From the IMG/VR virus record IMGVR_UViG_3300033997_000092, positions 186,001-250,000 of that record: a DNA stretch of 64,000 bases; one strand, given 5' to 3'. Below are positions 25,062-44,467 of the stretch, one piece after another. A program made the position numbers and the translations under genes. Positions within the stretch are counted from its first letter, which is position 1; each line of letters begins with the position of its first letter. The notes under the pieces were generated by a model. It searched no databases and was not told where the DNA came from. It worked only from the letters and a program-made list of their open reading frames with translations.

Positions 25062-25853
25062 TTAATCTCCCATCACTTGCCAGAAGAAATCCCATTTATC
25101 TGGAAGTGGGTTTGGGTGGGTTCCGGGTTTGAGTGTTATTGTTATACCGCCAATCTCAGTATCATCATAGATGAATTCACCAAAGAAGTATTTACTTGCT
25201 TGATAGCATTCTGGATCTAAGAATGTAAGCTGAATACTTGCGATACCGTTTACAAAGTTTAGTGGAAACAATAACGACACTGTATCACTGATAGGCAATG
25301 TCTCAGAAGTGAAACGTCCACTTTGAATCATACCTCCAGCTCTACGAAGCCGCATTGCTACACCGCGAGTACCTTTTACCCATTCAGGTTCATCGCCATC
25401 ATTACCCGGAGCGCCTGTTGCTCCTGTAGGGCCGGTAGGGCCAATGGGGCCCAATAAACCCTGAGGACCAATAGGACCTGTAGGCCCAGTGGGACCTATA
25501 GTCCCTCTGTCGCCTTTAATACCAGGACATCCTTGAATGCCAGGACGACCGTCACGACCGTTTCGTCCTGCTGCTCCAGTAAGACCTCTAGGTCCTCTGG
25601 CTCCTGTCTTTCCTTCTGGAGCTGTTCTTTCTGTTAACAGTCCTGAAGCCGTGTAGATATTGTTGTTCATATCTACAATAGTTATTGTTCCTGAGTTGCT
25701 ATCAATGCTGAAGCTCTTTATTAGAGGATCGCCCACTGATTCAGGAGCTACTACTGCCATCTGGCCTGGAGCCGCAACTTGCATCAAATCGCCTGTACCT
25801 GCTGTACCGGGATCGATCATAGCTGGGCTGATTTTAGTCAATTTGTTAGACAT
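25062..25853 (-). CDS. Collagen-like tail fibre protein with gp53-like C-terminal domain
   Basis: About 23 contiguous G-X-Y triplets; C-terminal MIQSGR...VSLLFPLNF...QLT...ITI...FFWQVMG. Confidence 0.8.
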   Translation of the reverse strand: MSNKLTKISPAMIDPGTAGTGDLMQVAAPGQMAVVAPESVGDPLIKSFSIDSNSGTITIVDMNNNIYTASGLLTERTAPEGKTGARGPRGLTGAAGRNGRDGRPGIQGCPGIKGDRGTIGPTGPTGPIGPQGLLGPIGPTGPTGATGAPGNDGDEPEWVKGTRGVAMRLRRAGGMIQSGRFTSETLPISDTVSLLFPLNFVNGIASIQLTFLDPECYQASKYFFGEFIYDDTEIGGITITLKPGTHPNPLPDKWDFFWQVMGD

Positions 25854-25867
25854 ATCGTTGCATCCAC

Positions 25868-26107
25868 TTAAGGAGATTCGCTTGGTTCAAATGGCTCAAG
25901 CCATAGAGGAAATTCTGGATCGTCTGGAGCATGTACTGCTTCATCATGCTCTGGATTCCGAATTCGTGTATTTTCTGGCACCATGCGGTACCACCCAGTG
26001 TTTTCGATATTACGAACGAGCCAACCAGCGTCCGCGAAATTATTTACACGGAACTGGTTGGCTTCTTTGCGAATATCTCTGGGTCTCAGGATTATTCGTT
26101 TTGCCAT
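25868..26107 (-). CDS. Small protein resembling the N-terminus of the 1123-aa fibre
   Basis: WLVRNIENTGWYRMVPENTRIRN versus LRIRSRDNRSWLLIDPKAIRMRD. Confidence 0.55.
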   Translation of the reverse strand: MAKRIILRPRDIRKEANQFRVNNFADAGWLVRNIENTGWYRMVPENTRIRNPEHDEAVHAPDDPEFPLWLEPFEPSESP

Positions 26108-26118
26108 AATAAATTAAA

Positions 26119-29100
26119 TTATAGAGAAGTTATGTTATTGTTGTTAATCAAGAACCTGGAAGTTGTTTCTGGATTCTCAATTATAACAGGCGAGCCTGCG
26201 TCTTGCGCGATAGTCAGACCTGAATTCTGCCATGCTGACACACTCTGGTTATACCGATATGTAATGTTTGCTTGAGCATCGTAAACTTTTGTTAAGTCCA
26301 CAGCTCCAGAAAACATTGTATCTAAGAATGTTGCACCTGCTTGGCTTCTGACCATATACCCGTAATTGCTTTGATTGCGGAACGGCGCATATTTTGAATC
26401 AGAATTCAAATCAAGCGTTATAGTCGAGTTCGGATCATATGATGGGACTGCTCCTGTGTACCAATCAGTACAACGCGCTGTTAACGTATTTCCTGAGCGG
26501 ACAACTTCAATTTTGCGTCGGGCATCAGACCATCCTCGTATACCACTTCCTACAAGTATACCAGGAATAGAAGCTACTACGACACCATTCTCAATAAAGA
26601 ATAGTCCCCAATTCATGTCAGGCGCAGGCGTCATACCGTTACCTATGCCACCACCTGTACAACAGAAAGATATTGTACGTACTATGTTGTCTGACCCTAA
26701 ATCGAAGCCCACTAATGCTCCTATTAAGTCGTCATCGGTATCAGCAGATGTTACAACCACTTCATACTTGTAGTCGCTATATTTATCAGGAGATACGAAG
26801 CCTGTGTAGGACGATAAGTTGTCTGGCATAACTATTCTGTCTGGGTTAGATTGTAGTTGCCAGTTTGCTGCGGATCCTTGTGCTGTGCTGGCATTTGCAT
26901 AGAAGTTGTTTGCGTCAGTTCTCCCCCAACTGTTGAAAATCTCTTGTTGGGTTGGAGGAGAGTACGCATTCATACGGGCCTGTGCTTCTACAGACGTTCC
27001 ATAAATATAACCAGAAATTTGTGGAATCGGTGTAGGGCAATTCATCGTGTACGTCCATGCCGTTCCATCTGGACCTGTCACACGTATCATACACGTTGTT
27101 GCGTGTGGAGGGCCAGGATAAAAGAAACTTAATGTTCCGTTACCTGAGACCAAACCACCTGTAGTAGCAACAAGTTGACCTTCATAGAAGATTTCCATCA
27201 TGTCAGGTACACTGTACATAGTGTAGTTTACGTCAAGACGTCCTGCATCAGGACCTAAATAATGTATCGTTTCTGTTGTTCCTGCACCACCTGCAGGTGT
27301 TTCAACACCGCAAGGAGTAGCATCGTCGTCGCGTATTGTGATAGTTCCTATAGGTTTAACAAGGATACCACGAGTGTTGTTGGATAAGATGATTTCAAAA
27401 GTTTCATCATTCTCTATATCGCTATCACCTACTATCGTAATAGGAATAGTCTTTTCACTTTCGCCTGATTGGAAGCAGATTTGCCCACTAGCACCGACAT
27501 AATCTGGTTCTTGATCAACTGCGTCGATATATGCTTCTGATTGACCTGAGTTGATTTGGCCAGTCATTCCTGTCCACAATGGATGAGGTCCGTTCTGGGC
27601 AATAGCGTTTTCCACAGTCAAATTCATTGTATCGCGATCTATTGAGCCTTTGAACTTAATCCCGTAGAAATCAAACAGAACTTCGTTGGCGCCCTTGTAG
27701 AAGCCTATGCCGCTAGGGTCACCATCTACGCCGTGGTCAGCGATTACACCGAATCCTTGACCTGCAAGATGTGAAGCCTTCATCGCTGCTATCAGCGCTG
27801 GAGAGTTTACTTGTCCTCCAGTGTATGCACTACTGATATACAAAACACAATCAAATCCGTCAAAGAACGCTTGTGTTTCTGGACACTCATTGCCGTACAT
27901 GACTGTTAACGTGCGTCCTGTACCTGCAGCAGCCGAAGTAAAGTAGTTTGTGAAGCCTGTGTACGTTACACTGTCTTTAACATCGTAAGCTTGTCCAGCT
28001 ACTCCTGCATCACCCATGAGTAATACTGCGCCACCTGTCTTGCTTCCACTTAACCAGTTCATTACGTTTTGTAAGAACAGCAGAGTGTTTCCGTACTTCT
28101 GGACTGTAGCGCGATCATTCCAATATCCGTTGTAGAATTTAGGAAATGCACCGTCTAAGTACATCTTACGGTCACCAGCTATGTTCTCAATAACCATAAC
28201 ATGGGGGAGCTGTTGGTCGTCTTTAGCTAATGAGCGAACACTCAAGTCGCTCTTTGCAGTTCCATCTTGTGTACGCCAATCGACACACAGTGGAGTTGAT
28301 CCCTGATAAGGCTCGCTAAGGAAAACACGTACATCTATTTCGCGGGAAACATCCAATTCAACGATGCTCATGTCTTCTATGCGAATCTCAGGATCGTTAC
28401 CCTCAAGAACGCACGGTAATTCAAATGTGATTGTTCCAGAATCAGTATCACTTACACCAAGAACAGCATATTGCTTATCCGCAACAGTGGCTGTTATTGT
28501 TATAGGATATTGTGCGCGGTTATCTTCAAGTGCCAGTTGTTTCGTGAAACGAATCTTTGCTATACGTCCTTCTTCTTGGACTTCTAGCAGTTCTACCATT
28601 CCGTTACCTATGTCTCCGTGCCATAGATATTCGTATTTTCTCTGTTGCCAGTCAGGAGGATTAACAAATCTGACTTCAACAAGTGCTTCTTGTGACCAGA
28701 CATCATCAACAAAATAACATCTGTCTTCACATGGAACAGGCGGAGGCGGTGTTGGATCGGGTGGAGGAGGAGCAACAGGCACTACTGGAGTACGCTCATA
28801 CACTTCGTACAAGTGAGGACTATGTTCACCCCAACTATGCACTTGACGATAGCCTCTACGTTCCCATGTCTCCGGACAAAATCCAAATGGAGCACTAGAG
28901 CCACTTTCAGTAGCTAAAATGTTCCAGCGCCACCGAGCTAATATCGACGGGTCTGTTACTATCAAAGGGTCAGTGTATATAGATGCACATGATATTTCGT
29001 CTGTGCCTCTCGGATCACTGTACACACTTGAGTATTCTTTATCGTTTTCCCAAGGAAATGCTGTGGCTTCATTTGACTTACCGCCAATCATCTTACCTTT

Positions 29101-29823
29101 AGGCAACTGTGTGAATATTCGCTTCCATCCGTTGTACTTGTCATCAGGCTGAGTTACTGTGCGTATTGGTCTACGTGCTAAATAACGTAAGTTTGCATTG
29201 GTGTCGATTATTTTCATGCGACGACCCGCCAAGCTGCTTGGATTACCGGGAGCTCTAAAGAAGCTGCACCAACCGCCAAACACCTGCGCGTGATATATTT
29301 CACCTGAACTGTTGATTAGTCCATTATCGATTCTGTTACACGATGCAGGACAGAACGCATAACCTTGCGCTACAAAACGTGGATTACCGCCGTACGGACC
29401 TACGTTGAATACTCCATGAGCATGTACAAGATACTCATAATCATCTTCCCATTGAATAGGAAAATCAGTCACGGCGCCTAACCAAAAATGTTCCCAGTTG
29501 TCGTTATCACCTGCAGGAGAAGCAGTACCGAAGTTGATAGGACGTTCCAGGATACGTATGATATTTACGTTACCTCCGCGCCTGTCAATACTGCGGATGC
29601 CTTTAGTTACTTGATCGAATATCATCCAACCGTCAATAGTTCTGATAGCAAATCCGCGATCTCCTGGATTTATAGCTGCTGCCAGTGTTATACAGCGGCT
29701 GTGATCCATTTCGATATTTCTGTGTCCCGCTATAGAGAACACAATGTATTCATGATCGAATTTCCAATCATACGGAACCCATGTAGCTCCGTTCAAATTG
29801 TCATAGACTACATTCCAAGTCAT
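26119..29823 (-). CDS. Giant multidomain tail fibre / adhesin with interrupted Calx-beta domain
   Basis: VDWRTQDGTAKS...PDY..SGQICFQSGESEKTIPITIVGD..ENDETF (Calx-beta), Pro-rich linker, one beta-sandwich module, lectin-like C-terminal region. Confidence 0.7.
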   Translation of the reverse strand: MTWNVVYDNLNGATWVPYDWKFDHEYIVFSIAGHRNIEMDHSRCITLAAAINPGDRGFAIRTIDGWMIFDQVTKGIRSIDRRGGNVNIIRILERPINFGTASPAGDNDNWEHFWLGAVTDFPIQWEDDYEYLVHAHGVFNVGPYGGNPRFVAQGYAFCPASCNRIDNGLINSSGEIYHAQVFGGWCSFFRAPGNPSSLAGRRMKIIDTNANLRYLARRPIRTVTQPDDKYNGWKRIFTQLPKGKMIGGKSNEATAFPWENDKEYSSVYSDPRGTDEISCASIYTDPLIVTDPSILARWRWNILATESGSSAPFGFCPETWERRGYRQVHSWGEHSPHLYEVYERTPVVPVAPPPPDPTPPPPVPCEDRCYFVDDVWSQEALVEVRFVNPPDWQQRKYEYLWHGDIGNGMVELLEVQEEGRIAKIRFTKQLALEDNRAQYPITITATVADKQYAVLGVSDTDSGTITFELPCVLEGNDPEIRIEDMSIVELDVSREIDVRVFLSEPYQGSTPLCVDWRTQDGTAKSDLSVRSLAKDDQQLPHVMVIENIAGDRKMYLDGAFPKFYNGYWNDRATVQKYGNTLLFLQNVMNWLSGSKTGGAVLLMGDAGVAGQAYDVKDSVTYTGFTNYFTSAAAGTGRTLTVMYGNECPETQAFFDGFDCVLYISSAYTGGQVNSPALIAAMKASHLAGQGFGVIADHGVDGDPSGIGFYKGANEVLFDFYGIKFKGSIDRDTMNLTVENAIAQNGPHPLWTGMTGQINSGQSEAYIDAVDQEPDYVGASGQICFQSGESEKTIPITIVGDSDIENDETFEIILSNNTRGILVKPIGTITIRDDDATPCGVETPAGGAGTTETIHYLGPDAGRLDVNYTMYSVPDMMEIFYEGQLVATTGGLVSGNGTLSFFYPGPPHATTCMIRVTGPDGTAWTYTMNCPTPIPQISGYIYGTSVEAQARMNAYSPPTQQEIFNSWGRTDANNFYANASTAQGSAANWQLQSNPDRIVMPDNLSSYTGFVSPDKYSDYKYEVVVTSADTDDDLIGALVGFDLGSDNIVRTISFCCTGGGIGNGMTPAPDMNWGLFFIENGVVVASIPGILVGSGIRGWSDARRKIEVVRSGNTLTARCTDWYTGAVPSYDPNSTITLDLNSDSKYAPFRNQSNYGYMVRSQAGATFLDTMFSGAVDLTKVYDAQANITYRYNQSVSAWQNSGLTIAQDAGSPVIIENPETTSRFLINNNNITSL

Positions 29824-29835
29824 ACATATTCCTTT

Positions 29836-29854
29836 TGGGAGACCAAGTCTCCCA
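29836..29854. promoter_or_regulatory. Intergenic hairpin without U tract directly upstream of the 1234-aa gene RBS
   Basis: TGGGAGAC-caa-GTCTCCCA, 8-bp perfect stem. On the coding strand it is followed by AAAGGAA (SD). Confidence 0.5.
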
Positions 29855-29859
29855 TAAGA

Positions 29860-32800
29860 TTATAATTGAAGATTTCCCGCAACGTCTGACAATACTAAAG
29901 TAAGTTCGTTACTCTTTAATATATTGCCTGCGCTGTCTTTTATTAAACAGTATACCCTCCACTCACTGCGTTTTTCAGGAGGTGTGTTTGATGATAAGTG
30001 TCCATCTATAACTTCCACTCTAAATAAGTCATTATCTGGAGAGAAGTCATTAGGCACGGCTACATCAATTTTAGCAACATAATTGCTATTAGGGTTGTTT
30101 ATGTTGTTGAAAGTTTCGACAGCTTCCCATTTGTAAGAATATGTCTTTGCAGGATCGTATGGATACGAAGCAGCAATTCCATGTCTGTTACGTGCGGCAG
30201 GATTACTGACAAACCCACCGTTAGCTTCCATATATGCTATTTTTCCTGGCTGCGCTATTTCTGTATGGTTTTGATCAGCTAATTGAGAGAATCCTATACC
30301 AAATATAACTGCACATCCAAAAGCTTGGTATTGTGTTGTTGAGTATGATTCTGCGGCATAGTTAGTACGTGTGAAGTTTAAGTCACTCACTGTGCCTCCA
30401 CCGACATTCGGCTTCAGTATAGTAACAGTACCTTCGTTATCCAGAATTGTTGCATTCACAGGATTACTTATACGCAAGTAGAACTGTCTGCCATTATTGT
30501 CGTGCGCTGGAGTTAATGTTTCCACAGGAACATTAACACTTGCTTGTCCCGCTAACAATGTAGCTGTCCCACTGCGACTATTGTAATCCGGATTTTGCAC
30601 TGTGCTTTCTGGAGTAACCATTAACTGCGCTTGGTTGTAGCTTGCATCTATTACACCATCTGTAGGAACGCCTTGAACAAGCGGACTTCCAGGAAGGTGA
30701 GCTAAATGGTCAACTACATAATATTGAGGAGTAGCGCGCCATTGACGCTGTGTAGCATCGAATGAAATACGCTCATCCGACAAGTTGTTGAATGTTGCCT
30801 GTAGTGCTGCATTGGCCCAGTAGTTACGGTGCATGTCCGTCGGGAACACACGCATTGGGAAGTGCAGTACAGCTCCATTACGCAGCAGTGTTCCAAGTGC
30901 TTGGCCTATACGCGCAGTATTACCTGACATATAGACAGCAGCAACTGAGAATCCTGACATCTGGAACCACAATTTAGAATCGGCTACAGTAATAATGTCA
31001 GCATCCGTTGTAGACAGTGTGTTTTCCCACGTGTTGCTATTGTTTGGGATAGTACGCATTGGAACCTGCACAACAGTCATGTTGTAGATGTTACGCATTG
31101 CCTGAATAAAGTTAGAGCATTTAAGTGCCCACTCTGTTTCAGGTTCACCTTCACCTAGTATCAGCCATTTCTTGTTAGTCAAATCTGGAATTTTCATCTT
31201 CCATGCGTTAACTGTCATCTTGGCTTCTGGTGTAAGCGTAGCAAACGATGATACTGCCTGAATAGTGTTTATTTGCGAACATTCGGTCGCACGATATTCA
31301 CTGTTCATCAGGCGTTCCCACGAAGCATCTACTACAAGAGAGCCTGCTGTTCCGGGGAAGTTTTGTACGCCGAAAGTAGCTAAGTTCGGCACTGCGTCAC
31401 CGTATGGACGGTTCTCATTGCCTGTACTGAACACTGCCAGAGTACCACTTAATCCACTACTACCGCCAACACTTTTAGCTGTCCCATCTACAGTAACAAA
31501 ATCAAACGTCACATCAGTTGGAGCAGGAATATTGCTGCTGACAGTTACTTGGGCAACGGCACCTTTAGTCACATTGGCATCACTGACCACCAACTGCACT
31601 TCGTCATCACATACAGGTATAACTTTATCATCTACTTCAATGTCCAATACAGGAACAGGACAACCAACAAAGTATTCCCAGCTTGAGCCTAATGGTGCAT
31701 CGATTCTCACTGTGATACGTTTACGTCTGCCATTATCTAAAGCACTGTTTGTAAGGAATTGCACGAACGTAGTGCGCTTGCCTGTTTTGGCTTCGATAAG
31801 ATTCATGTCCATGTCGAATACAGACACGACATATTGGAACTCGCCTTTACCAACTACTTTGATACTGACTACGCCAGGATCGACACCATTATCCATATCA
31901 TAGTTGTCTTCTGTGCTGCTGTGGCCCATAGACTGCAATCCAGCTACAGGTTCCTCACACGGCCACGGATTATCACGGTAGCCTGGAGTGTTTGTACAGA
32001 ACAGAGTATAATACCAGCTTTTCATATCGTCATCGAGCAGACGCTCTGCCGATGTTACACGTACCATGATGTCATGTACTTCTGTAGGGAACTCGTAAGG
32101 TTTCCACCACCACTTCAACGAACCTAATTCTTGAGCTGGGTCCATTGTACTTGCTACACGATTCTGGTTGTGATACACTTCAAACTTATCTGCATTTAAC
32201 CAGCTAGTGTAATCAAGAACTAACTGCCAGTTCACGTTAGGGTCTGATACTGGGCCGATGTAATGATGGAATTCATAGTACCACTTACCGTCTTCCAAAC
32301 GTGCTTCAAGAGGAAACACAGTTGCGTGACACGGAGCAGGGTAAATAGGAGTACCGACATATTCTTCTGTGAATACACCCAAGAATTGATTCAAGTCAGT
32401 GTTATCCAAATTCACAACAGCTAAGTTGGGTTTTGGTCCCACAAATTGATACGCCCAGCGAGTACCGTCGCTACCACGCACACGAATCATAACACGTTGT
32501 TCACCTTCACCTACAGCTTGGTCAAGATAGAATTCGATTTTGCTACGATCTTTAACACGGCCACAAGTTGTTGCTATGCGAGTTCCCATGTAATAAACGT
32601 CAACACTGATACCTTCACTGTCGTAGCTGGCAAACAACACTTCAAAGTAACCTGGACGATCACCTGTGTTGAATATAGTTTCAGTTATCTGACTTCCGCC
32701 ACTGAACACACTGCTTCCCAAGTAGTTCGGGTTAGCATAAGTACCACGACCGTATGACGGCGTAACACCTGAATCATCGTAGCTTTCAATAGCATAGTTT

Positions 32801-33231
32801 AATGCTGGACGTTTAAGCACGTAGCCTTTAGGTGCACCAGCATCCGGCAACTTTTCAAATCCCGGTTCACCTGCATCAGGCAAATCATATCCTGGAGGAT
32901 AGCCTGTTATCAGATTGAACAAGTTACCATCAGAGCCTATTCCATTTCCAGAACCAGCTTCGTCTGCTGTTAGTCCTGGAGGACAATTCACTGAACCTAC
33001 TACGCGGAATTCACACTCAACATCAAAGCGAGGATCGAATGTGCAGTCGTTATGTATAAACTCACTATTGGCACCATCACGCATACGGATAGCTTTTGGG
33101 TCAATAAGCAGCCAGCTCCTGTTGTCGCGTGACCTGATACGCAACGTAGCTTTGCATGGATCTAGCCATTTATTGTTGTAGGAGTTTCTTATTAAGAGGC
33201 GTCCCAGCGCTGGGATTTCGTTATCAGCCAT
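29860..33231 (-). CDS. Giant multidomain tail fibre / adhesin with three beta-sandwich repeats and interrupted Calx-beta domain
   Basis: FDFVTVDGTAKS...PDYNSRSGTATLLAGQASVNVPV; three repeats ending W.Y...[CG]P or CT. Confidence 0.7.
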   Translation of the reverse strand: MADNEIPALGRLLIRNSYNNKWLDPCKATLRIRSRDNRSWLLIDPKAIRMRDGANSEFIHNDCTFDPRFDVECEFRVVGSVNCPPGLTADEAGSGNGIGSDGNLFNLITGYPPGYDLPDAGEPGFEKLPDAGAPKGYVLKRPALNYAIESYDDSGVTPSYGRGTYANPNYLGSSVFSGGSQITETIFNTGDRPGYFEVLFASYDSEGISVDVYYMGTRIATTCGRVKDRSKIEFYLDQAVGEGEQRVMIRVRGSDGTRWAYQFVGPKPNLAVVNLDNTDLNQFLGVFTEEYVGTPIYPAPCHATVFPLEARLEDGKWYYEFHHYIGPVSDPNVNWQLVLDYTSWLNADKFEVYHNQNRVASTMDPAQELGSLKWWWKPYEFPTEVHDIMVRVTSAERLLDDDMKSWYYTLFCTNTPGYRDNPWPCEEPVAGLQSMGHSSTEDNYDMDNGVDPGVVSIKVVGKGEFQYVVSVFDMDMNLIEAKTGKRTTFVQFLTNSALDNGRRKRITVRIDAPLGSSWEYFVGCPVPVLDIEVDDKVIPVCDDEVQLVVSDANVTKGAVAQVTVSSNIPAPTDVTFDFVTVDGTAKSVGGSSGLSGTLAVFSTGNENRPYGDAVPNLATFGVQNFPGTAGSLVVDASWERLMNSEYRATECSQINTIQAVSSFATLTPEAKMTVNAWKMKIPDLTNKKWLILGEGEPETEWALKCSNFIQAMRNIYNMTVVQVPMRTIPNNSNTWENTLSTTDADIITVADSKLWFQMSGFSVAAVYMSGNTARIGQALGTLLRNGAVLHFPMRVFPTDMHRNYWANAALQATFNNLSDERISFDATQRQWRATPQYYVVDHLAHLPGSPLVQGVPTDGVIDASYNQAQLMVTPESTVQNPDYNSRSGTATLLAGQASVNVPVETLTPAHDNNGRQFYLRISNPVNATILDNEGTVTILKPNVGGGTVSDLNFTRTNYAAESYSTTQYQAFGCAVIFGIGFSQLADQNHTEIAQPGKIAYMEANGGFVSNPAARNRHGIAASYPYDPAKTYSYKWEAVETFNNINNPNSNYVAKIDVAVPNDFSPDNDLFRVEVIDGHLSSNTPPEKRSEWRVYCLIKDSAGNILKSNELTLVLSDVAGNLQL

Positions 33232-33287
33232 TTTACTTCTCCGAGCCAGAAACGACTTGAGCCAGAATAAACTGGCCCAAATCAGTA

Positions 33288-33782
33288 TTATTTAGTTGCT
33301 ATCCATAAAGCGCCTGCACCTACTGCACCAGGATCTTCAGCTTGAATGTAGATCTGCACACGTCCATCTTGTCCTCTGATGCCTTGAGGACCTGTAGATC
33401 CTGTAGGACCAATAGGACCTTCAATGCCTCTAGGTCCACGTACTCCAGGCTTACCTTGAGGGCCTTGGGGTCCACGACATCCACGAGGACCTTGAATACC
33501 TTCAGCTCCAAGTAAACCATCTACACCAGGAGAACCATCGAATCCAGGAAGACCTTGACGACCTGTTCCCATACTTGATAGCGTTGGATATCCGCGAATG
33601 TGCAGAGGCTCAAATCCTGGAATAGTTATTGTAGTTATTCCCATTACAGGATCGAATACACCAGTTACACTTTGCCCTGCTGTAGGATCAGGTAATACAG
33701 AAAGTGATTTGCCTTCAGCTACAACTTGACCTGCTACTGCGGTAGCTGGCTTAATCATATCCATAGATACTTTGGTAACCAT
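33288..33782 (-). CDS. Collagen-like protein
   Basis: 23 G-X-Y triplets, C-terminal EDPGAVGAGALW. Confidence 0.85.
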   Translation of the reverse strand: MVTKVSMDMIKPATAVAGQVVAEGKSLSVLPDPTAGQSVTGVFDPVMGITTITIPGFEPLHIRGYPTLSSMGTGRQGLPGFDGSPGVDGLLGAEGIQGPRGCRGPQGPQGKPGVRGPRGIEGPIGPTGSTGPQGIRGQDGRVQIYIQAEDPGAVGAGALWIATK

Positions 33783-33792
33783 GAATCACTCC

Positions 33793-34440
33793 TTAATCGA
33801 AAAACTGTTCAATGTCATCATCAATCTGACCCACAGTAGGATTAACCCAAATACCGCCAGGACCTATCGATGGTCCGGGATCGATTTCACTGATAACGAG
33901 ATTGATACGTCCGACTGGGCCTTGAGGACCAATGGGGCCTGCTGGACCAGGAGCGCCTGTTGGGCCTGTTGGGCCTTGAGCTCCAGTCGGACCTGTAGGA
34001 CCTGTAGGTCCCATTTGACCCATAGGACCCGGACACCCAGGAGCTCCCTGAGGACCTATGTCTCCAGGCAAACCGTCGCGTCCATCTAAGCCCTGAGGAC
34101 CTGTTGGGCCCTGAGGACCAGGACATCCTGCTTCACCTTCTAAACCGTCGCGTCCATCTTTACCTGGAGCTCCGTCAGGACCCGGATCACCCTGAGGACC
34201 TTGAGGACCCTCAGGTATCTGACTTACTATGGGAAAGTTACCCAGCACTTGTGTACTGCCGTCATAGAACGAGAATATAACTTTGCCTGTAGTTTCGTCG
34301 TATCTAAGTCCTGTCACAGGGGACACTGTTGAAGCAGTTCCTTCTGTGGGAGCAAGTACGCCTCCAACAACGCTTAAAGATTTACCTTCAGCCGATGTAG
34401 GCGCACGAACCATGCTTGTGTCAATTCTTGTTAGTTTCAT
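33793..34440 (-). CDS. Collagen-like protein
   Basis: 34 G-X-Y triplets, C-terminal [13 protein letters not shown]. Confidence 0.85.
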
Positions 34441-34443
34441 TAC

Positions 34444-35949
34444 CTATACCTTATGAATAGGACCCGCGTTATCTAAGTTGTGAATTAAATAACCACTCAC
34501 AAAGAATACGTCGGTCGTTTCCACATTGAGGCTGACTACAGGCTTCTGGTCTTCAATAACTTCCACTTTAATTACATCGTGGAACTGACCAGATTCGTGA
34601 TAAATTTTGTCACCAACAACTACACGATACATACGTTCAAAATAACAAACGCCATTACGTTGAATTAATATGTTTTCGTCTGATGTTAATGTGACAGTGC
34701 CATTCAGTCTGATAAACCTTCCGAATGAGCTATGCGTGGCTGTCATTACAACAGCGGCTTCATACTCTGCTTTAAAATTAGTTGTTGTCCACGATAAGAA
34801 CTGATCGTTATCTGAACTATCAGGAAGTCCTGCAATACGCACTGAGTCAACCGCGTCTGCTTCGTAAAGCGATTCGACTAATACTTTGCGCCTGCCCGCA
34901 GAAATCATTTGACCGTACGGTATACAGCCGCCACCGCCACCTCCAGGAGGGTTAGTTGGAGGGGTAGCTGCATTAGTTGCAGAAAACTTAAACGTACCTG
35001 TCAATGTCAGTGTTTTGTTGTTGTCACCTGTGTCTTTGATTGTCAGTATTACCTGACCTTCGCGGACTTCAGTTGTTCCTGGAGCAACATACACACGACA
35101 ACGCAAGTTCATGTTTGTGGAACTATCGCCTGTTTGATATATGTAGACATTTGGCGCCATCGTAAGAAAATCACCTGTCCACTTATACTCAAAAGGACCT
35201 TTACCGCCACTAAAATTGTCGAGTGTGTACGCAGCAATGCCTTCGTAGAAATCACCACCGACATGGGACAGCGTTAATGCGCGACTAGGAATGCTGCCAC
35301 GCATTTGCTCTATAATCTCTGGATTAGTAGGAAGACCTGTATCAACAGTAACAAGTTGCCCCCAGATATAGACAAGTGGATCAGTAGGTTCAGAATCGCT
35401 GAATACTACAGATGTTATAGGCGTAGGACCTGTAGGACCTGTAGGACCAATCAAGCAGCTATTACCTATCGCTCCTCGTGCACCGTCAGGTCCTGTCGGT
35501 CCTATTATACCCATCGGGCCTGTAGGACCTTCATCGCCTCCACAGCCTAGCGGGCCTACTGGTCCACGGGGGCCATCTTCAGCATCTAATCCTGGCTCAC
35601 CCTGAATACCCATCACACCAGGAATACCAGCACAGCCTACTTTGCCCTTACGGCCATCAAAGCCTTTGTAGCCATCACGGCCTTTACGTCCAGGAAGACC
35701 TTTCTTGCCAACTTTACCTGTACCCAGATTGGACTGTGTTAAGAATCCTGTAGCTTCAAAAGTACCGTCGGGCGTAATGAATGTTAGAGCACCACGTACA
35801 CTGTCCCAAGCAAACTCATAAGAACTTGACTTCGCTACAGGAGGTGCTTCGTAATCTATTAGCGCAGAAGAACCTGGTACGATAGCCTTTTGACCATCGT
35901 ACCCTTGTTCAGCAGCTACGTTTTGTAAGTTAACGTAAGTGTCTGACAT
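34444..35949 (-). CDS. Collagen-like protein with C-terminal Hint domain
   Basis: About 33 triplets with two non-Gly interruptions, a beta-rich domain, a PPGGGGG linker and a Hint domain. Confidence 0.8.
   Translation of the reverse strand: MSDTYVNLQNVAAEQGYDGQKAIVPGSSALIDYEAPPVAKSSSYEFAWDSVRGALTFITPDGTFEATGFLTQSNLGTGKVGKKGLPGRKGRDGYKGFDGRKGKVGCAGIPGVMGIQGEPGLDAEDGPRGPVGPLGCGGDEGPTGPMGIIGPTGPDGARGAIGNSCLIGPTGPTGPTPITSVVFSDSEPTDPLVYIWGQLVTVDTGLPTNPEIIEQMRGSIPSRALTLSHVGGDFYEGIAAYTLDNFSGGKGPFEYKWTGDFLTMAPNVYIYQTGDSSTNMNLRCRVYVAPGTTEVREGQVILTIKDTGDNNKTLTLTGTFKFSATNAATPPTNPPGGGGGGCIPYGQMISAGRRKVLVESLYEADAVDSVRIAGLPDSSDNDQFLSWTTTNFKAEYEAAVVMTATHSSFGRFIRLNGTVTLTSDENILIQRNGVCYFERMYRVVVGDKIYHESGQFHDVIKVEVIEDQKPVVSLNVETTDVFFVSGYLIHNLDNAGPIHKV
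34477..34926 (-). other. Hint (intein/Hedgehog/BIL-like) autoprocessing domain
   Basis: Begins at Cys in GGGGG-CIPYG; V..L..GD.V-like, LT block B, VVVGDKI, VVSLNV..TDVFFVSGYLIHN end motif; 150 aa, no endonuclease. Confidence 0.8.
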
Positions 35950-35964
35950 ATATTTGCCTTTAGT

Positions 35965-38334
35965 TTACGGCAAAGGAACTACAATGCCTGTCAACTCTGC
36001 TACAAGTGCTATTGTGAACTGGCCAGCAACAACATTCGTTACTTTAGCTTTAGCTACAATATCAACTACGCCATCTGGGTAGTTTTCTTTAAGCAGAATA
36101 AGACTTGACCCTTTAGAACCGTTACCATATCCGTAAGAGTTTTCACCGCCACGCTGAGTAGCAATACCTGTCTCGCCTGTACCTGGAATACTACGACCGT
36201 AGTCAACTGTCGCTTCACTAGGACGCTTAACAGCCAGAATGAATTGCAATTCTTCATTGCCTGATGTCACAGTGTAACCTGGACCTAAACGGGCACTAAA
36301 GTCTGCATGGACGTTAATCATTATGTCTGTTTTGAATTCCACACGCTGCGTAATGACAACTTCGTTTGTGTCTTCGGCGCGTTGGCGTGAACTGATGCGT
36401 TGGTAGTTACCTTTATCAAGTCTGACCTTATCAGTCGAACTGATTTTGAAGTTAGGGAACGTACCTTCTATTAGCATGCCTGGACCTGGAACCAAGTCAA
36501 TCGGCACAGCAGGCAGGAATATTGGGTCAGCATTCTGACGTATTACCTTGTACCCTGTTGGTGTAGGAATAATATCAGTTACCATTCCACGCAATCCAGT
36601 GTCGCTGCTTCCTTCTGCTCTTACGTTATGGAAAATCATTACTTCAAGTGGTCGTCCCGTAGCAAAATCTGTTCTTGCTACAAGCTTGTTGCCTACAATA
36701 GAATACTCTGACTTCATAACGTGTGCACCTGACTCACTCAAAAACACTAGGTCTTTTGACTGTGGTGCGATTGGCAGTGAAAGCACGTTACGCTTGGTAG
36801 TCGGATTGAACGTAGCCGTGATTACCTGTGTACTATAGCCTGGAATTGGACGCTGTATGAAAGCGTTGATTTCAATCTTCAAGCCTACACCAGGAGCTTC
36901 GCTGAATATTACTTTCCTGCGTACAACATCTACGGTATATGACGAATGCACTGTCATTATCCTGTCGATGAAGCACCAAGAATAGAATACGTTTTCAATA
37001 TCAGCAGGCAAGTCGAATTCACGACGGGAACCATCACCAATATCTTCAAAGCTAACGCATTCCGTGTACATGCCCGAGTGAGGCTCTAACTGGAATAAAC
37101 GCGCATCGATTTCTAACCCAGAAGGAACATTCTCTGCAAATTCCAGCATGTTGTCTTCGATGTTAGCGGACTGGCGGAACTGACGCACACCAGAAATACT
37201 GATATACCAGTAATGGCTATTCTTGCGATAGCTGTACAGGCGCATCTGAGTTTCATCTACACCTGCTGTCAGTGGATCTTCGCTGTACAGAAGGAATTTG
37301 TTTGTTTCTTCCATAACAACTTGCGTTATCGCACTGAACTTCAACTTACCTGGAGGATGATACAGGTTTCCTCTTGTGCGGGAAGCTGCTGCTCCACTCG
37401 GTACCCAACGTGGAACACCATCAAGCGGACCAGCTACAAGTACCCAGTCTTCATCTGTTCCTGCACGGCTAGGCAATCCTGAACCTGAGCCTTGCACTGT
37501 GTTTTGTTTCCAGATACTTACAGTGCTTGTTACATCAAGTTCCAAGAACGCCAAATCACGGGTCATTACTTCTTCGGCTGCTGTTATAACACAACGTCGT
37601 GTAGTACCTTCTCCAGGACCTGAAACAATTTGAACTACAACAATGTCATCTTCTACAAGACCATAATCAGTTATCAATGAATCGACTTTGAATATCGACG
37701 GGTCTGTTACTTCTGTTGGGTTACCCATAAACAACTTGGTAAATCCCAGGAAGCTCCAATGCTTACCTGCCAATCCACCGCGCACAGCAAGTCCTGCTGT
37801 TTCACTGTTTTGTTCATCTGGATTGACGACAATATCAAGCACAGCCACAGCATTGGTGATTGCTTCTGCTGGATTAGGTAAGGCATCGACGTTGCCTACA
37901 CTCGGTACTGAACCGAATTCTGACAGTGTGACATCGATAACGTGTGCATTGCCTTGTGCTAAGTGCAACAAGAATTCTATTTGCGCCGCACGATTCTTCC
38001 GTTTAGTAACAGATTCACTGAAACGTACACGGCCTAACACAGTGCCGTCGTTCAGTCCAATAGTTGCTTCCGACAGTTCTATTGATGAATTGCCTCCTAC
38101 TTCACGAGGTACAACTACAGTGAACCGAACTGTATTGCGGTTTAAAACTTCAATGTAGTGAATGCGTCCGCTGTGGTGTTCTGTACCTAGTAACGCATCT
38201 GGTGTCTGAGCCGGTTCTGAGCCTTGGTAATCACCAACAGCAAAGAAACGGGGGCGAATAACTGCGCCCCCTGCTTCGGCACTCAGCAACGCCTGTTCAC
38301 CTTGTGGGGTAAGAATCAAACGATCTGGTGTCAT
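35965..38334 (-). CDS. Baseplate-attached tail-collar fibre protein (DUF3751 / P2 gpH-like N-terminus)
   Basis: ILTPQGEQAL....FAVGD ... VGG ... EATIGLNDGTVLG N-terminal domain; internal GDGSRREFDLP-type repeats. Confidence 0.65.
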   Translation of the reverse strand: MTPDRLILTPQGEQALLSAEAGGAVIRPRFFAVGDYQGSEPAQTPDALLGTEHHSGRIHYIEVLNRNTVRFTVVVPREVGGNSSIELSEATIGLNDGTVLGRVRFSESVTKRKNRAAQIEFLLHLAQGNAHVIDVTLSEFGSVPSVGNVDALPNPAEAITNAVAVLDIVVNPDEQNSETAGLAVRGGLAGKHWSFLGFTKLFMGNPTEVTDPSIFKVDSLITDYGLVEDDIVVVQIVSGPGEGTTRRCVITAAEEVMTRDLAFLELDVTSTVSIWKQNTVQGSGSGLPSRAGTDEDWVLVAGPLDGVPRWVPSGAAASRTRGNLYHPPGKLKFSAITQVVMEETNKFLLYSEDPLTAGVDETQMRLYSYRKNSHYWYISISGVRQFRQSANIEDNMLEFAENVPSGLEIDARLFQLEPHSGMYTECVSFEDIGDGSRREFDLPADIENVFYSWCFIDRIMTVHSSYTVDVVRRKVIFSEAPGVGLKIEINAFIQRPIPGYSTQVITATFNPTTKRNVLSLPIAPQSKDLVFLSESGAHVMKSEYSIVGNKLVARTDFATGRPLEVMIFHNVRAEGSSDTGLRGMVTDIIPTPTGYKVIRQNADPIFLPAVPIDLVPGPGMLIEGTFPNFKISSTDKVRLDKGNYQRISSRQRAEDTNEVVITQRVEFKTDIMINVHADFSARLGPGYTVTSGNEELQFILAVKRPSEATVDYGRSIPGTGETGIATQRGGENSYGYGNGSKGSSLILLKENYPDGVVDIVAKAKVTNVVAGQFTIALVAELTGIVVPLP

Positions 38335-38369: not shown

Positions 38370-41300
38370 TTAGCGTTTGAACGCCACAGAGAATTCAGCC
38401 TGGCCGAATCCGCGCTTCACACTTTTGAAAATGATCCAAGTCTCTGTCATTCCGTCCAAGTAAGTACGGACAACATCTACTCCTGGTTCCAAGTTACCCC
38501 AATCAACATCTGGGTTAATACTAGGAACCGCAGCCATTCTCAACGGCACTAACACTTTCGGGCAAGCAAAGTACAGATAGTCTGTGCTGTTTGGTAACAC
38601 AGTAAATTTACCTGTGTCAACGCTTGTTAAACGCTTGAACTTATTCTCTGACCAAATCAGGTTAAAGTAAGTTGTGTTGATTACATTAAATCCTGCTGTC
38701 CAATATATTGAGAAGCTGGATTGCAACAAGATACGGAACTTCTTCTCTTGCCTGAACCCACCTAATACATAAACACAACGAATATCAATGTAAGTGTCCT
38801 GCTCTACATAAGGCGTTGTTAAACGTCCTGTATTTCTTTCGATTGACAATCCTGTCATCTTAGTATCGAGCATCCAGATACATGCGGAGGTCACATCTAT
38901 AGGAGTCGGATTGTTACGCAACTTCAACATAGCAACCAAGTTTATAACTGAGTTGTCTTTGTAGCCAGGACTGTTAGCATCGACCAGCAGATCCTCTGGA
39001 ACAAATCCTGCCAGCAAGTTGAACACAAAGTCCCGCGTTATTTCACGTTGTCCTTCACGACCAATTGCTTTCAGTGTCATAGTTGTGTCTGTGTCAAGTC
39101 TAGGTATTTTGAATGAAAACCTGTCATTGACTTCAAGGCCTTTAGGACCATTTACTATTTCCCATGACAATACATCCGCAGCAATGGCTGTAGATCCGTC
39201 ACGGCGAAGTACACGGACATTCGGATAGAAAACAGTATCATCCTGTGCAAAGTTAGGACCGATCAGTTCAATAATGTCCAGTGCCTTGGAGGCTGTTACT
39301 GTGATTACATAACGGGCTTCCACTGTTTCAGTGAACACTTCGGCTGATTCTTCTGTCTCACGGAATTCCTCAGTGTATGAAGCGACTAAGGTAACCTGCG
39401 AGTCATCTGATTGTGGTGCTATGTACAAACGACCCGTTGCTTCATCAAGAGACACACCATTACCAGTCGGCTCGGCACGCCACAGCACAAGTCCAGGCGG
39501 AGGACCTGCAACAGGGTTATCTGTACGTTCCAAATCAACAGACAATTGGTAGTACAAGGTGCCATCCAAGCTATCAAATGCCCACTGATTGGGTTCATCA
39601 AGTATCAAGCTCTTGAAGTCATAGCTGATTAAACCGCTAGGACCTGTTATCTTCATGTTCAGACCGCGCAGAATACTGTTGATCTTTTTCATGTAGATAT
39701 TCAAGGTTTCTGTAAGTGTTGAAATACCGTCGTCATAGTTGGTGATTAATATCAGCCTAGCATCCACATTCATTTTGGGATATAGGTAACCATCACCATC
39801 AATATCTACTACGCTGGCAATAGGAAGAATCTCTTCCATGTCGATTTTGGAAAGCATATCAACAGATACGCGAGTTCCACTCCCATCACTAGACATAGGC
39901 AATATGTCTTCCTTGCCGTCAACTTCAACCAAGTAACGTATAAGTTCACGTTGCTGGTCAAAATCAACATCACGATAGAAATCAATTTCCCAGTCGCTTG
40001 ACACAGGATATTCTTCACCTTCGTCATCGTAGTCCATGACCAACGCATAACTGTACATCATGCTTTCGTTAGCTTCTATTTCAACTGGACCTGATATGTA
40101 GTACGAATCAATGCGGTCGTGAGGTTGTAATGGTGCATTCACGACAGTCAGAGGCTGCGTTACTTCTTGGGCATAGAATTTGCCTACCAACTGGATAGTT
40201 TCGTCTTCGTCAATGTAACGAGTCTGAATCAGTGTTCTGTTGAGTAATACACCGTCATACTGCGCCATGAGTATGCCTAACTTGCTTGGCCAAGTTTGTC
40301 CTGTTACAGGACGGTTGCTTGGGTTAGCAAATATCGGTTCACCTTGTATCAGCTTTCTTACTTGGTCAACAGACAAGTTTTCATTGTCGATTGCCATCTG
40401 TTCGATTGTAGTGCGGTCAATACCAATCAATGCTTCCACAATACGATCAAGTGGGAACTGGCCGTTGTTGATATTGATAGGGAGATTATCAGTTTCACCC
40501 ATCTGGTCGTAACCCATCCAAGTAGCATTTACTTCTTGGGTTTCGCCGTTGTCGTAGTACCCTATCGTTGGGAAGAAGTAACGGTTGCCTTCTGCAAGCT
40601 GTAGTGGTATAGTAGATTCGATACGTTCCACTTTTGGTATGCGTGGTATTGCAACAACAGGAACAACATACTGCTGCACGTTTCCATTCGTATACACTGC
40701 TTTGATATGTATTGCACCCTGCACCTTGTCTGGGCCTTCCGTGTACTTCAGCATAACCATCGGATGAGTCAGACCAGTCTCCGCATCGATGAATTGGAAA
40801 TCAGGATTGTTCTCGATTTCTATCTGGCTAAAGGACTGGAATTGCAGCGCATTACCTACATTCGTAGCTGTTGCCAATATTTGAGTAAGAGCGTCATCAC
40901 CGTACACTATTACCTGTGTAGGCAGCACTTCAGTTCTGCTGTCAGTTGACCAACGCGCAGTAAAGCGCATTTGAACACTCTGGCCTTCGTTGATTGTGTT
41001 TGCTACGTCTGTGAGAATACCAATCAAATCTCTGGAATTCTTTTGGATAGTGACAAACTTTTGTGCTGTTATTGTCTGGTAATCGGTGTACCGTTGTGTG
41101 CTTACACGGACAAGACCGACACTGTTGTCTGTAACAAGAGGCATCTGCGCCACACCAGTAGAATCGATATTCACGTTCAGCACATCTTGGTTATCGACAT
41201 TTCCTCCTGTACTGTACCAATCGGCCTGATTGATAATACTACGCTGACCGTTGCTCCAGTTAGCGATAGCTATGAATCGGGCAACACGACCTTCTACAAC

Positions 41301-44463: not shown

Positions 44464-44467
44464 GTTG

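What the first reader, a model, noticed from the sequence alone, without database searches (positions are those of the whole stretch)
25062..35949. All four collagen domains carry Gly-Cys-X at exactly triplet 10 (and 20, 30)
Seen, counting from the first G-X-Y: 25062 gene GCP at 10; 33288 gene GCR at 10; 33793 gene GCP at 10 and 20; 34444 gene GCA at 10, GCG at 20 and Cys replacing Gly (CLI) at 30. The surrounding triplets differ, so the register itself is conserved. Three of the genes are adjacent, and three of the four share a KhT.h...Mh N-terminus. Inference: a cysteine ruler that staples chains or adjacent triple helices (disulfide or metal) every 30 residues, possibly setting a heterotrimer register, which is unusual for prokaryotic collagen-like proteins.
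Basis: seen in the sequence. Interest (0 to 1): 0.66.

Follow-up and report, generated by a model that had tools for sequence, protein, structure and literature searches.

The report
Conserved cysteine staples in phage collagen fibres
Four collagen-like tail-fibre proteins of an uncultured jumbo phage, and nearly all their relatives in a large phage group, carry an exposed cysteine exactly ten collagen triplets from the start, most likely a site that ties fibres to each other or to the baseplate.

Summary
The window is part of a 261-kb jumbo phage related to NCTB, PaBG, Lu11 and the Erwinia/Dickeya 'hairy' myoviruses. Its only four collagen genes are A 34444-35949, C 33793-34440, D 33288-33782 and B 25062-25853. 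All four have Cys in the X position of triplet 10. A and C also have it at triplet 20, and A has Cys in place of Gly at triplet 30.

In 106 distinct homologues from 46 related loci, 155 of 166 collagen-domain cysteines sit at 10X, 20X or 30G. Cys10 is the only non-Gly column conserved at 90% or more across the four paralogue families.

Cys20 is optional. In 42 loci it is present in A if and only if it is present in C. A and C are always 34 triplets long, D 23, and B 24/25 or longer.

An ideal-helix model puts same-level X-position thiols 8.5 Å apart and facing outward, so they cannot pair within one helix. Gly-position thiols lie 3.9 Å apart and can.

Best reading (not proven): exposed staples to neighbouring helices or baseplate proteins at about 87 and 173 Å, plus an internal knot in A. 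This resembles collagen VI. Disulfide versus metal, and mixed versus separate A/C trimers, remain open.

The parts
34444..35949 (-). Gene A, 501 aa. N-terminal beta domain (residues 1-77), 34-triplet collagen domain, middle domain and C-terminal Hint-like domain.
   Evidence: PHROG 38766 'virion structural protein' covers residues 28-494 at 2e-58.
35413..35718 (-). Collagen domain of A (residues 78-179). Cys106 at 10X (35632-35634), Cys136 at 20X (35542-35544), Cys165 replacing Gly at triplet 30 (35455-35457), and a Gly-to-Ala break at triplet 16.
   Evidence: In the family, 30G Cys is present in 30/30, 10X in 25/30 and 20X in 13/30.
34477..34926 (-). Hint-like autoprocessing domain of A (Cys342 after a Gly run, ending in His-Asn 490-491). 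It is a side feature, not part of the cysteine ruler.
   Evidence: In alignment A3 the Gly-Cys junction, one Thr and the terminal His-Asn are invariant. Four of 7 relatives hit PT-HINT/Hint_2/Intein_splicing. The window copy reaches only E = 0.016.
33793..34440 (-). Gene C, 215 aa. N-domain, an uninterrupted 34-triplet collagen domain (33904-34209), Cys106 at 10X (34123-34125), Cys136 at 20X (34033-34035), and a short C-terminal beta motif ending in WVNP.
   Evidence: In the family, 10X is present in 26/26 and 20X in 11/26, and there are no Gly breaks.
33288..33782 (-). Gene D, 164 aa. N-domain, a 23-triplet collagen domain (33357-33563), Cys102 at 10X (33477-33479), and a short C-terminal motif of the same type as in C.
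   Evidence: In the family, 10X is present in 27/27 among IMG/VR and GenBank loci. It is lost in two further lineages, L055 and L056.
25062..25853 (-). Gene B, 263 aa. N-domain, a 25-triplet collagen domain (25389-25613), Cys109 at 10X (25527-25529), and a globular C-terminal domain.
   Evidence: In the family, 10X is present in 23/23. There is a weak Gp53-like_C hit.
35965..38334 (-). 789-aa tail-collar-fibre-like protein directly upstream of A. It was used as the marker for synteny and phylogeny. It has no conserved Cys.
   Evidence: PF12571 at 1.4e-8. Homologues were found in 64 phage records. Alignment A1 has no invariant Cys.
29860..33231 (-). 1123-aa fibre or baseplate protein directly downstream of D. 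Its N-terminal half carries conserved cysteines that appear and disappear in pairs.
   Evidence: PHROG 26008 at 1e-108. Cys columns 26/63, 301/412 and 73/83/223 co-vary across 22 loci.
38370..44926 (-). Baseplate context: a 1546-aa tail protein, a 487-aa gp6-like wedge protein (Cys336 invariant in 21/21) and a 152-aa gp25-like protein.
   Evidence: Synteny with the annotated PaBG, Lu11, Erwinia and Dickeya records.

Best explanation
A, B, C and D are paralogous baseplate-attached fibres. Each has a small N-terminal beta domain, a collagen triple helix of fixed length and a distal domain. In all four, triplets 4-8 form a proline-free, highly charged GKD/GRD block. Triplet 10 places a cysteine in the outward-facing X position, and a proline-rich stalk follows. 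In a trimer this gives three exposed thiols about 87 Å from the N-domain. They are too far apart to bond with each other. I infer that they lock the docked stalk to a neighbouring triple helix or to a baseplate or fibre protein, by disulfide after lysis or by a shared metal ion. A and C have equal-length helices and add a second rung at triplet 20 (about 173 Å) that exists only when both proteins have it, so at that level A most likely contacts C. In A, Cys replaces Gly at triplet 30, at a conserved helix break. There the three thiols face the helix axis and can knot the A chains together before the distal domain. Shown here: the positions, their conservation, the coupling and the geometry of an ideal helix. 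Inferred: trimer formation, the bonding chemistry and the identity of the partners.
For: Positions are shown. Conservation: the four-gene set with 10X Cys appears in NCTB, Lu11, PaBG, Dickeya JA29, Erwinia SNUABM_5, Yersinia fHe-Yen9-02 and Pseudomonas HRDY3. In 106 distinct proteins from 46 loci, 155 of 166 collagen-domain Cys are at 10X, 20X or 30G. Cys10 is the only non-Gly column at 90% or more in an alignment of 98 sequences whose N-domains are only about 17-40% identical. Of 109 representative clusters, 93 have 10X Cys. Coupling: A20 and C20 agree in 42 of 42 loci, with 4-5 coincident state changes and none uncoupled. A and C have 34 triplets in every lineage. Geometry: same-level X-X Cβ distances are 8.5 and 11.6 Å, the X Cβ radius is 5.1 Å, and Gly-position Cβ atoms lie 3.9 Å apart. 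All four families share a charged block at triplets 4-8. The neighbouring 1123-aa protein has cysteines that co-vary in pairs, the signature of paired Cys chemistry in this virion module. Precedent: collagen VI has one Cys per chain inside the helix. [quoted passage not shown]
Against: There is no direct evidence that any bond forms. Phage assembly takes place in a reducing cytoplasm, and the genome encodes no recognisable sulfhydryl oxidase, thioredoxin or DsbA, so oxidation would have to happen after release. Level-10 losses are not coupled: A10 is lost in the Dickeya clade, L057 and L058, C10 in L058, and D10 in L055 and L056, while the other paralogues keep theirs. So a simple fixed heterotypic pairing at level 10 is excluded, and no partner Cys was found in neighbouring proteins. 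The A20/C20 coupling does not reach significance in the independent-pairs test (p 0.25-0.5 on well-supported branches). A and C are adjacent genes that could be exchanged as a block. A 10-triplet step returns to the same face only for a 10/3 helix. For the 7/2-like model it turns by about 172 degrees.
Confidence: 0.5

Rival explanations
1. Mixed A/C trimer with a cysteine code. A and C are chains of one heterotrimeric helix (A2C or AC2), and the cysteines mark or fix chain composition and register. D and B form their own trimers.
For: A and C are adjacent, both have 34 triplets in every lineage, and both carry the post-collagen beta motif in the same register. All Gly breaks are in A and none in C, D or B, which is easier to tolerate if A is not the only chain. 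Cys20 is coupled between A and C. Precedent: the presence or absence of one Cys decides chain composition in fibrillar procollagens (PMC11573663).
Against: X-position Cys of the same triplet are 8.5 Å or more apart in an ideal helix, so they cannot fix register by bonding within it. A10 is lost in several lineages while C10 is kept. The N-domains of A and C are only about 26% identical, and A has a 47-residue N-terminal extension in the PaBG clade. The six-chain A3+C3 fold gave no answer.
Confidence: 0.2
2. Metal bridge rather than disulfide. Cys10 thiolates from several different helices (up to one each from A, B, C and D) share a Zn, Fe or Cu ion. Such a site could form inside the cell.
For: A metal site is compatible with a reducing cytoplasm and with the absence of a phage oxidase. 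A multi-ligand site tolerates the loss of one ligand, which matches the uncoupled single losses at level 10.
Against: No His, Asp or second Cys is conserved next to Cys10. Level 20 has only two contributing proteins, which suits a pair better than a metal site. There is no composition or structural evidence for a metal.
Confidence: 0.15
3. The cysteine is a site of another chemistry, such as a post-translational attachment, a redox-sensitive latch released during infection, or an acceptor for the thioester made by the Hint domain of A.
For: The thiol is exposed. Hint domains occur in A and in neighbouring genes of NCTB. The Dickeya clade lacks both the Hint domain and A10.
Against: The PaBG and Lu11 clades lack the Hint domain but keep Cys10 in all four proteins. 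No modifying enzyme was recognised next to the genes. The Dickeya co-loss is a single event.
Confidence: 0.08
4. The pattern is inherited from the ancestral gene and has no present function.
For: The four genes are paralogues with no indels in the first ten triplets.
Against: Cys10 is the only non-Gly residue kept across four families whose other positions have diverged to about 20% identity. It persists in 93 of 109 clusters at 50% identity.
Confidence: 0.03

Closest known systems
Collagen VI (single cysteines inside the triple helix that stabilise dimers and tetramers)
   Same: There is one Cys per chain within the collagenous domain at a conserved distance from its end. The α3 Cys is 30 residues into the helix and links two parallel helices. 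Other helix cysteines bond to a non-collagen region of a neighbouring molecule (PMC12354898).
   Different: Collagen VI is an animal extracellular heterotrimer oxidised in the ER. Here the proteins are phage proteins made in a bacterial cytoplasm, most likely homotrimers, with four paralogues sharing the same position. No bond has been demonstrated.
C-terminal cystine knot of collagen III and FACIT collagens; Gly-to-Cys variants of collagen I (from general knowledge)
   Same: The triplet-30 Cys of A sits at the Gly position, at the end of or a break in the helix. There adjacent chains are within disulfide range (3.9 Å). The Lu11 clade adds Cys at 28Y and 32Y.
   Different: In the window there is one Cys per chain rather than the adjacent Cys-Cys pair of collagen III, so at most one bond per trimer plus one free thiol. 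In the window clade three more triplets follow it.
C1q and collectin 'bouquets'
   Same: Several collagen stalks start in register from homologous N-terminal segments. A charged Lys-containing collagen segment serves as a docking site, and inter-trimer disulfides hold the stalks together (general knowledge).
   Different: In C1q and collectins the cysteines lie in the non-collagen N-terminal segment, not inside the helix. C1q is an obligatory A/B/C heterotrimer of equal-length chains. Here D and B differ in length from A and C.
Phage and prophage collagen-like tail fibre proteins (for example E. coli O157 EPclA-type; PHROG 'collagen like minor tail')
   Same: A trimeric fibre is built from a G-X-Y domain flanked by capping domains and encoded in the tail module (PMC3368898).
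   Different: The EPcl collagen domains contain no Cys at all (PMC3368898). The position-specific cysteines and the four-paralogue set are particular to the PaBG/Lu11/Erwinia/Dickeya group.

Membership tests
Collagen triple-helix repeat proteins (PF01391), phage collagen-like fibre | Long run of uninterrupted Gly-X-Y triplets | tested here: met
   PF01391 scores 48-62 bits against a cut-off of 27.2. The proteins have 23, 25, 34 and 34 triplets; the last, A, has breaks at triplets 16 and 30.
Collagen triple-helix repeat proteins (PF01391), phage collagen-like fibre | Chains assemble into a trimer with a triple helix | not testable with these tools
   The six-chain fold gave no answer. Trimer formation is inferred from sequence only.
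Collagen triple-helix repeat proteins (PF01391), phage collagen-like fibre | Encoded in the tail or baseplate module of a tailed phage | tested here: met
   The genes lie between gp6-like and tail-collar genes and the giant fibre genes. The same order is found in eight annotated phages.
Supramolecular collagens stapled through intra-helix cysteines (collagen VI type) | Isolated Cys at a conserved position inside the collagenous domain | tested here: met
   10X Cys occurs in 101 of 106 homologues and 93 of 109 representative clusters.
Supramolecular collagens stapled through intra-helix cysteines (collagen VI type) | Side chain exposed and unable to pair within its own helix | tested here: met
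   In the ideal-helix model the X Cβ radius is 5.1 Å and the nearest X-X Cβ distance is 8.5 Å.
Supramolecular collagens stapled through intra-helix cysteines (collagen VI type) | Demonstrated disulfide to another helix or domain | not testable with these tools
   This needs non-reducing gels, cross-link mass spectrometry or cryo-EM. The A20/C20 co-occurrence is only indirect.
Supramolecular collagens stapled through intra-helix cysteines (collagen VI type) | Oxidising compartment or dedicated oxidase | tested here: inconclusive
   No Erv1/ALR, thioredoxin or DsbA family member was found in the 261-kb genome. The glutaredoxin search failed. Oxidation after lysis remains possible.
Heterotrimeric collagen of three adjacent genes (C1q-like A/B/C) | Three chains with collagen domains of equal length | tested here: not met
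   A and C have 34 triplets and D has 23, in all lineages. An A/C-only mixed trimer is not excluded.
Collagen III-type C-terminal cystine knot | Two adjacent Cys per chain at the end of the helix | tested here: not met
   In the window and in most clades there is a single Cys at the Gly position of triplet 30. Only the Lu11 clade has further Cys at 28Y and 32Y.
Hint / intein-like autoprocessing domain (C-terminus of A; side feature) | N-terminal Cys at the junction, block-B Thr-x-x-His, C-terminal His-Asn, and a nucleophile at +1 for splicing | tested here: inconclusive
   Cys342 after a Gly run, one Thr and His-Asn 490-491 are invariant in alignment A3. Four of 7 relatives hit Hint families at 1e-5 to 3e-7. 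The window copy lacks the block-B His, has Leu at +1 and scores only E = 0.016. It is therefore a divergent Hint domain, not a splicing intein.

The most novel reading that the evidence does not exclude
The baseplate fibres of this jumbo-phage group form a register-coded, covalently stapled bundle of different collagen triple helices. This would be a viral counterpart of collagen VI or C1q assembly. A charged docking block brings the stalks together. A universal thiol at 87 Å locks them. A second rung at 173 Å is specific to the A-C pair, and a Gly-position knot closes A. The cross-linked collagen lattice would then account for part of the unusual fibre apparatus of the 'hairy' myoviruses.
Probability: 0.35. 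Interest if true: 0.72.

Novelty: new variant of a known kind. Interest (0 to 1): 0.6.

Why it matters
Collagen-like fibres are common in phages, but position-specific cysteines inside the triple helix have so far been discussed for animal collagens. I found no mention of collagen or of these cysteines in the PaBG or Dickeya papers that were searched and read.

If the cysteines are staples, they reveal how a complex multi-fibre baseplate is held in register. They would also give a natural rule, a charged block followed by an X-position Cys every ten triplets, for cross-linking recombinant bacterial collagens, which lack hydroxyproline.

The idea is directly testable in cultivable relatives (PaBG, Lu11, and the Erwinia, Dickeya and Yersinia phages).

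Tried and rejected
- **Nucleotide search:** megablast of the region against phage records found nothing, so relatives were reached by protein search.
- **Solved structures:** sequence search found only animal collagens and BclA through the G-X-Y part, and nothing for the 789-aa protein or the N-domain.
- **N-domain fold:** the AlphaFold2 model has pLDDT 75 and five strands. It has no significant PDB fold match. It is probably intertwined in the trimer, so the monomer model is of little use.
- **Complex prediction:** three copies of A(50-195) with three of C(50-200) scored 0.07 against a mark of 0.34, a verdict of no answer. This is not evidence either way.
- **Partner cysteine:** no Cys column in the gp25-like, gp6-like, 1546-aa, 789-aa or 1123-aa proteins follows the loss of A10, C10 or D10.
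- **Phage-encoded oxidoreductases:** none found. One search failed.
- **Coupling statistics:** the independent-pairs sign test cannot reach 0.05 with the 2-5 contrasts available.
- **Recent internal duplication:** I considered whether the 10/20 spacing is a recent tandem duplication. Tandem Repeats Finder shows only 9-27-nt collagen periodicity and no 90-nt unit. Cys20 is gained or lost by substitution at constant length. Triplets 11-20 of A and C do echo triplets 1-10 (GPx GPx, then a charged block, then Cys), so an ancient duplication is possible.
- **Hint thioester link to Cys10:** rejected as a general explanation, because the PaBG and Lu11 clades lack the Hint domain but keep Cys10.
- **Literature:** searches for collagen or cysteine in papers on this phage group found nothing relevant.
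Full report
**What the window is.** The window is bases 186001-250000 of a 261,032-bp IMG/VR virus record with direct terminal repeats, that is, a complete jumbo phage genome. It has no nucleotide-level match among deposited phages. By protein, its 789-aa tail-collar-like protein (35965-38334) finds 64 jumbo phages at 30-36% identity. These are Phage NCTB, Pseudomonas phages PaBG, Lu11 and HRDY3, many Erwinia phages, Dickeya JA phages and a Yersinia phage. The literature places this group in the 'hairy Myoviridae' (PMC6143709). The region of the finding lies in the baseplate and fibre module, all on the minus strand. The gene order is as follows:
- gp25-like and gp6-like wedge proteins
- a 1546-aa tail protein
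- the 789-aa protein
- collagen genes A (34444-35949), C (33793-34440) and D (33288-33782)
- two giant proteins of 1123 and 1234 aa
- collagen gene B (25062-25853)
- a 161-aa protein

**Check of the observation.** Counting triplets from the first in-frame Gly gives the table below. I verified the Cys codons. These four are the only collagen genes in the genome.

| Gene | Triplets | Cysteines in the collagen domain |
|---|---|---|
| B | 25 | GCP at 10 |
| D | 23 | GCR at 10 |
| C | 34 | GCP at 10 and 20 |
| A | 34 (breaks at 16 and 30) | GCA at 10, GCG at 20, CLI at 30 (Cys replaces Gly) |

The shared N-terminal motif is real (consensus LTxxxxxMI). The four proteins are paralogues: each has an N-domain of about 75-80 residues and the collagen domain starts in the same alignment column. 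Agreement within one genome therefore shows conservation rather than four coincidences.

**Conservation elsewhere.** The same gene set is syntenic in NCTB, Lu11, PaBG, Dickeya JA29, Erwinia pEa_SNUABM_5, Yersinia fHe-Yen9-02 and Pseudomonas HRDY3. It carries Cys at 10X in 31 of those 32 proteins. A profile of the 789-aa protein fetched 39 further loci from IMG/VR. The set then holds 106 distinct collagen proteins and 3217 triplets. Of its 166 collagen-domain cysteines, 155 lie at 10X, 20X or 30G. The remaining 11 are all in family A, next to triplet 30.

| Position | A | C | D | B |
|---|---|---|---|---|
| 10X Cys | 25/30 | 26/26 | 27/27 | 23/23 |
| 20X Cys | 13/30 | 11/26 | none | none |
| 30G Cys | 30/30 | none | none | none |

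In an alignment of the N-domain plus 23 triplets (98 sequences), the only columns conserved at 90% or more are the glycines and this cysteine. A profile of the N-domain alone, searched against 1.84 billion representative proteins, found 424 relatives. Among the top 150, 109 have the N-domain followed by at least 12 triplets, and 93 of these have Cys at 10X. The next most frequent positions are 30G (33) and 20X (15), and every other position occurs four times or fewer. Collagen length is also fixed per family: A and C have 34 triplets, D has 23, and B has 24/25, or 44-53 in the Lu11 clade.

**Anatomy around the cysteine.** All four families share the same layout. Triplets 4-8 are a proline-free block with 1.2-1.9 charged residues per triplet (GKD/GRD type). 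Cys follows at triplet 10, and then a proline-rich, mostly neutral stalk. A and C have a second, weaker charged block at triplets 15-16, ahead of triplet 20. All Gly breaks are in A: always at 30, often at 31, and sporadically at 5, 6 or 16. C, D and B have none.

**Coupling between A and C.** Cys20 is optional. In all 36 loci from the first set that contain both genes, it is present in A exactly when it is present in C. Eight look-ups of divergent C-like proteins gave six more lineages with both genes: two with both cysteines and four with neither. On the tree of the 789-aa protein there are four changes of each trait on the same branches. On the tree of the C protein there are five.

The independent-pairs test yields only 2-3 contrasts on well-supported branches and 4-5 on the best tree. 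All go the same way, but the numbers are too few for significance. Because A and C are adjacent, exchange of the pair as a block could inflate the count. I therefore treat the coupling as suggestive evidence that A and C are in contact and in register at that level.

Level 10 behaves differently. A10 is lost in the Dickeya clade, L057 and L058. C10 is lost in L058. D10 is lost in L055 and L056. In each case the other paralogues keep theirs.

**Geometry.** I built an ideal triple helix from (Pro-Pro-Gly)10-type backbone angles. The model has a twist of 53 degrees and a rise of 8.66 Å per triplet, and an interchain Gly N to X carbonyl distance of 2.65 Å as an internal check.
- X-position Cβ atoms lie at a radius of 5.1 Å.
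- Those of the same triplet are 8.5 and 11.6 Å apart. This is far beyond disulfide range, and no other X-X pair is closer.
- Cβ atoms modelled at the Gly position of adjacent chains are 3.9 Å apart.
- Ten triplets span 86.6 Å.

So the cysteines at 10 and 20 must act outside their own helix, whereas the triplet-30 cysteines of A could bond within the trimer. Gly-to-Cys variants of collagen I do this (general knowledge). A ten-triplet step returns a chain to the same face only in a 10/3 helix. In the 7/2-like model it turns by about 172 degrees, so the picture of a straight ladder depends on the local helix symmetry, which is unknown.

**Supporting and limiting context.** The 1123-aa protein encoded next to D has cysteines that appear and disappear in pairs across lineages (26 with 63, 301 with 412, and 73 with 83 and 223). 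This is the pattern expected of paired cysteine chemistry in this virion module.

No column in that protein, or in the gp25-like, gp6-like, 1546-aa or 789-aa proteins, follows the losses of A10, C10 or D10. The partner at level 10 therefore remains unidentified. The genome encodes no recognisable sulfhydryl oxidase, thioredoxin or DsbA, so disulfides would have to form after lysis, or else the sites bind metal.

The N-domain folds as a small five-stranded unit (pLDDT 75) without a PDB match. Its core motif recurs up to 27 times in giant proteins found by the profile, which suggests a fibre-shaft repeat. A six-chain fold of A and C gave no answer.

**Interpretation.** The best-supported reading has three parts.
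- Triplets 10 and 20 carry exposed staples. After the charged block docks a stalk against a neighbouring helix or a baseplate or fibre protein, these thiols lock it, at about 87 Å and about 173 Å from the N-domain.
- The second rung is specific to the A-C pair.
- An internal knot closes A at triplet 30.

I give this about 0.5. The rivals are a mixed A/C trimer with a cysteine code (0.2), a metal bridge (0.15), another chemistry at the thiol (0.08), and a functionless relic (0.03).

**Comparison with known systems.** The closest functional analogue is collagen VI. Each of its chains has one cysteine inside the collagenous domain. The α3 cysteine, 30 residues into the helix, links parallel helices of the tetramer, and other helix cysteines bond to a neighbouring molecule's coiled coil (PMC12354898). 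The triplet-30 site resembles the C-terminal knot of collagen III but has only one Cys per chain. C1q and collectin bouquets share the idea of in-register stalks held by disulfides, but their cysteines lie outside the helix.

Among phage collagen-like fibres, the characterised E. coli prophage proteins have no cysteine at all in their collagen domains (PMC3368898). The PaBG and Dickeya papers that I searched and read do not mention collagen or these cysteines. I therefore rate this a new variant of a known kind. It is a real, strongly conserved and apparently undescribed hallmark, and its chemistry still has to be shown.

**Side observations.** The C-terminus of A is a divergent Hint domain. 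Its Gly-Cys junction, one Thr and the terminal His-Asn are invariant, and relatives hit PT-HINT, Hint_2 and Intein_splicing. The Dickeya A protein ends just before the point where the Hint domain begins in its Erwinia relatives, as if it encoded the already processed form. Other items are listed under Noticed in passing.

Noticed in passing
window 34477-34926 (-), C-terminus of gene A; also L006 13543-14004: A ends in a divergent Hint/intein-like domain: a Gly run, Cys342, and a terminal His-Asn followed by 10 residues. Relatives hit PT-HINT, Hint_2 and Intein_splicing. The window copy lacks the block-B His and has Leu at +1, so self-cleavage is more likely than splicing. NCTB has an extra stand-alone 'intein domain' ORF between A and C.
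   Followed up: partly
L009 20295-21269, L018, L020, L021, L047 (Dickeya JA-type phages): The A protein of the Dickeya clade (324 aa) stops just before the position where the Hint domain begins in its Erwinia relatives (477 aa). It is also the main clade that has lost Cys at triplet 10 of A.
   Followed up: partly
window 29860-33231 (-), N-terminal 540 residues of the 1123-aa protein: Conserved cysteines co-vary in pairs across 22 loci (26 with 63, 301 with 412, and 73 with 83 and 223). This suggests intramolecular disulfides or metal sites in a giant fibre or baseplate protein.
   Followed up: partly
window 43000-44463 (-), gp6-like wedge protein: Cys336 is invariant in 21 of 21 homologues, although the protein has only two cysteines.
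   Followed up: no
L017 15153-16220 and L038 (IMG/VR 3300028829 and 3300004097): This lineage has a fifth collagen paralogue (355 aa, 22 triplets) between C and D, with no cysteine in its collagen domain.
   Followed up: no
L057 4256-4990, L058 548-1243; proteins P0105, P0127, P0132: A divergent lineage of family A has neither the 10X nor the 30G cysteine. It has a single Cys at 29X instead. In L058, C has also lost Cys10.
   Followed up: no
L055 5761-6285 and L056 6481-6984: Two lineages have lost Cys10 in D only. In L056, A carries an extra Cys at 9X next to 10X.
   Followed up: no
proteins P0014, P0016, P0037, P0040 and others: The core of the N-domain (YD..tG.LTL...nG....I) matches 5-27 separate stretches in giant proteins of 1000-5450 aa. 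It therefore looks like a single unit of a widespread fibre-shaft repeat.
   Followed up: no
L013 (IMGVR_UViG_3300035670_007202, 10,945 bp): A short contig from another IMG/VR record encodes a 789-aa protein and A, C and D proteins identical to those of the window.
   Followed up: no
window 23646-24563 (-): A 305-aa ORF matching a PHROG annotated as HNH endonuclease (4.5e-25) lies inside the fibre module, two genes downstream of B. PaBG, JA29 and the Yersinia phage have an annotated HNH endonuclease at the same place.
   Followed up: no
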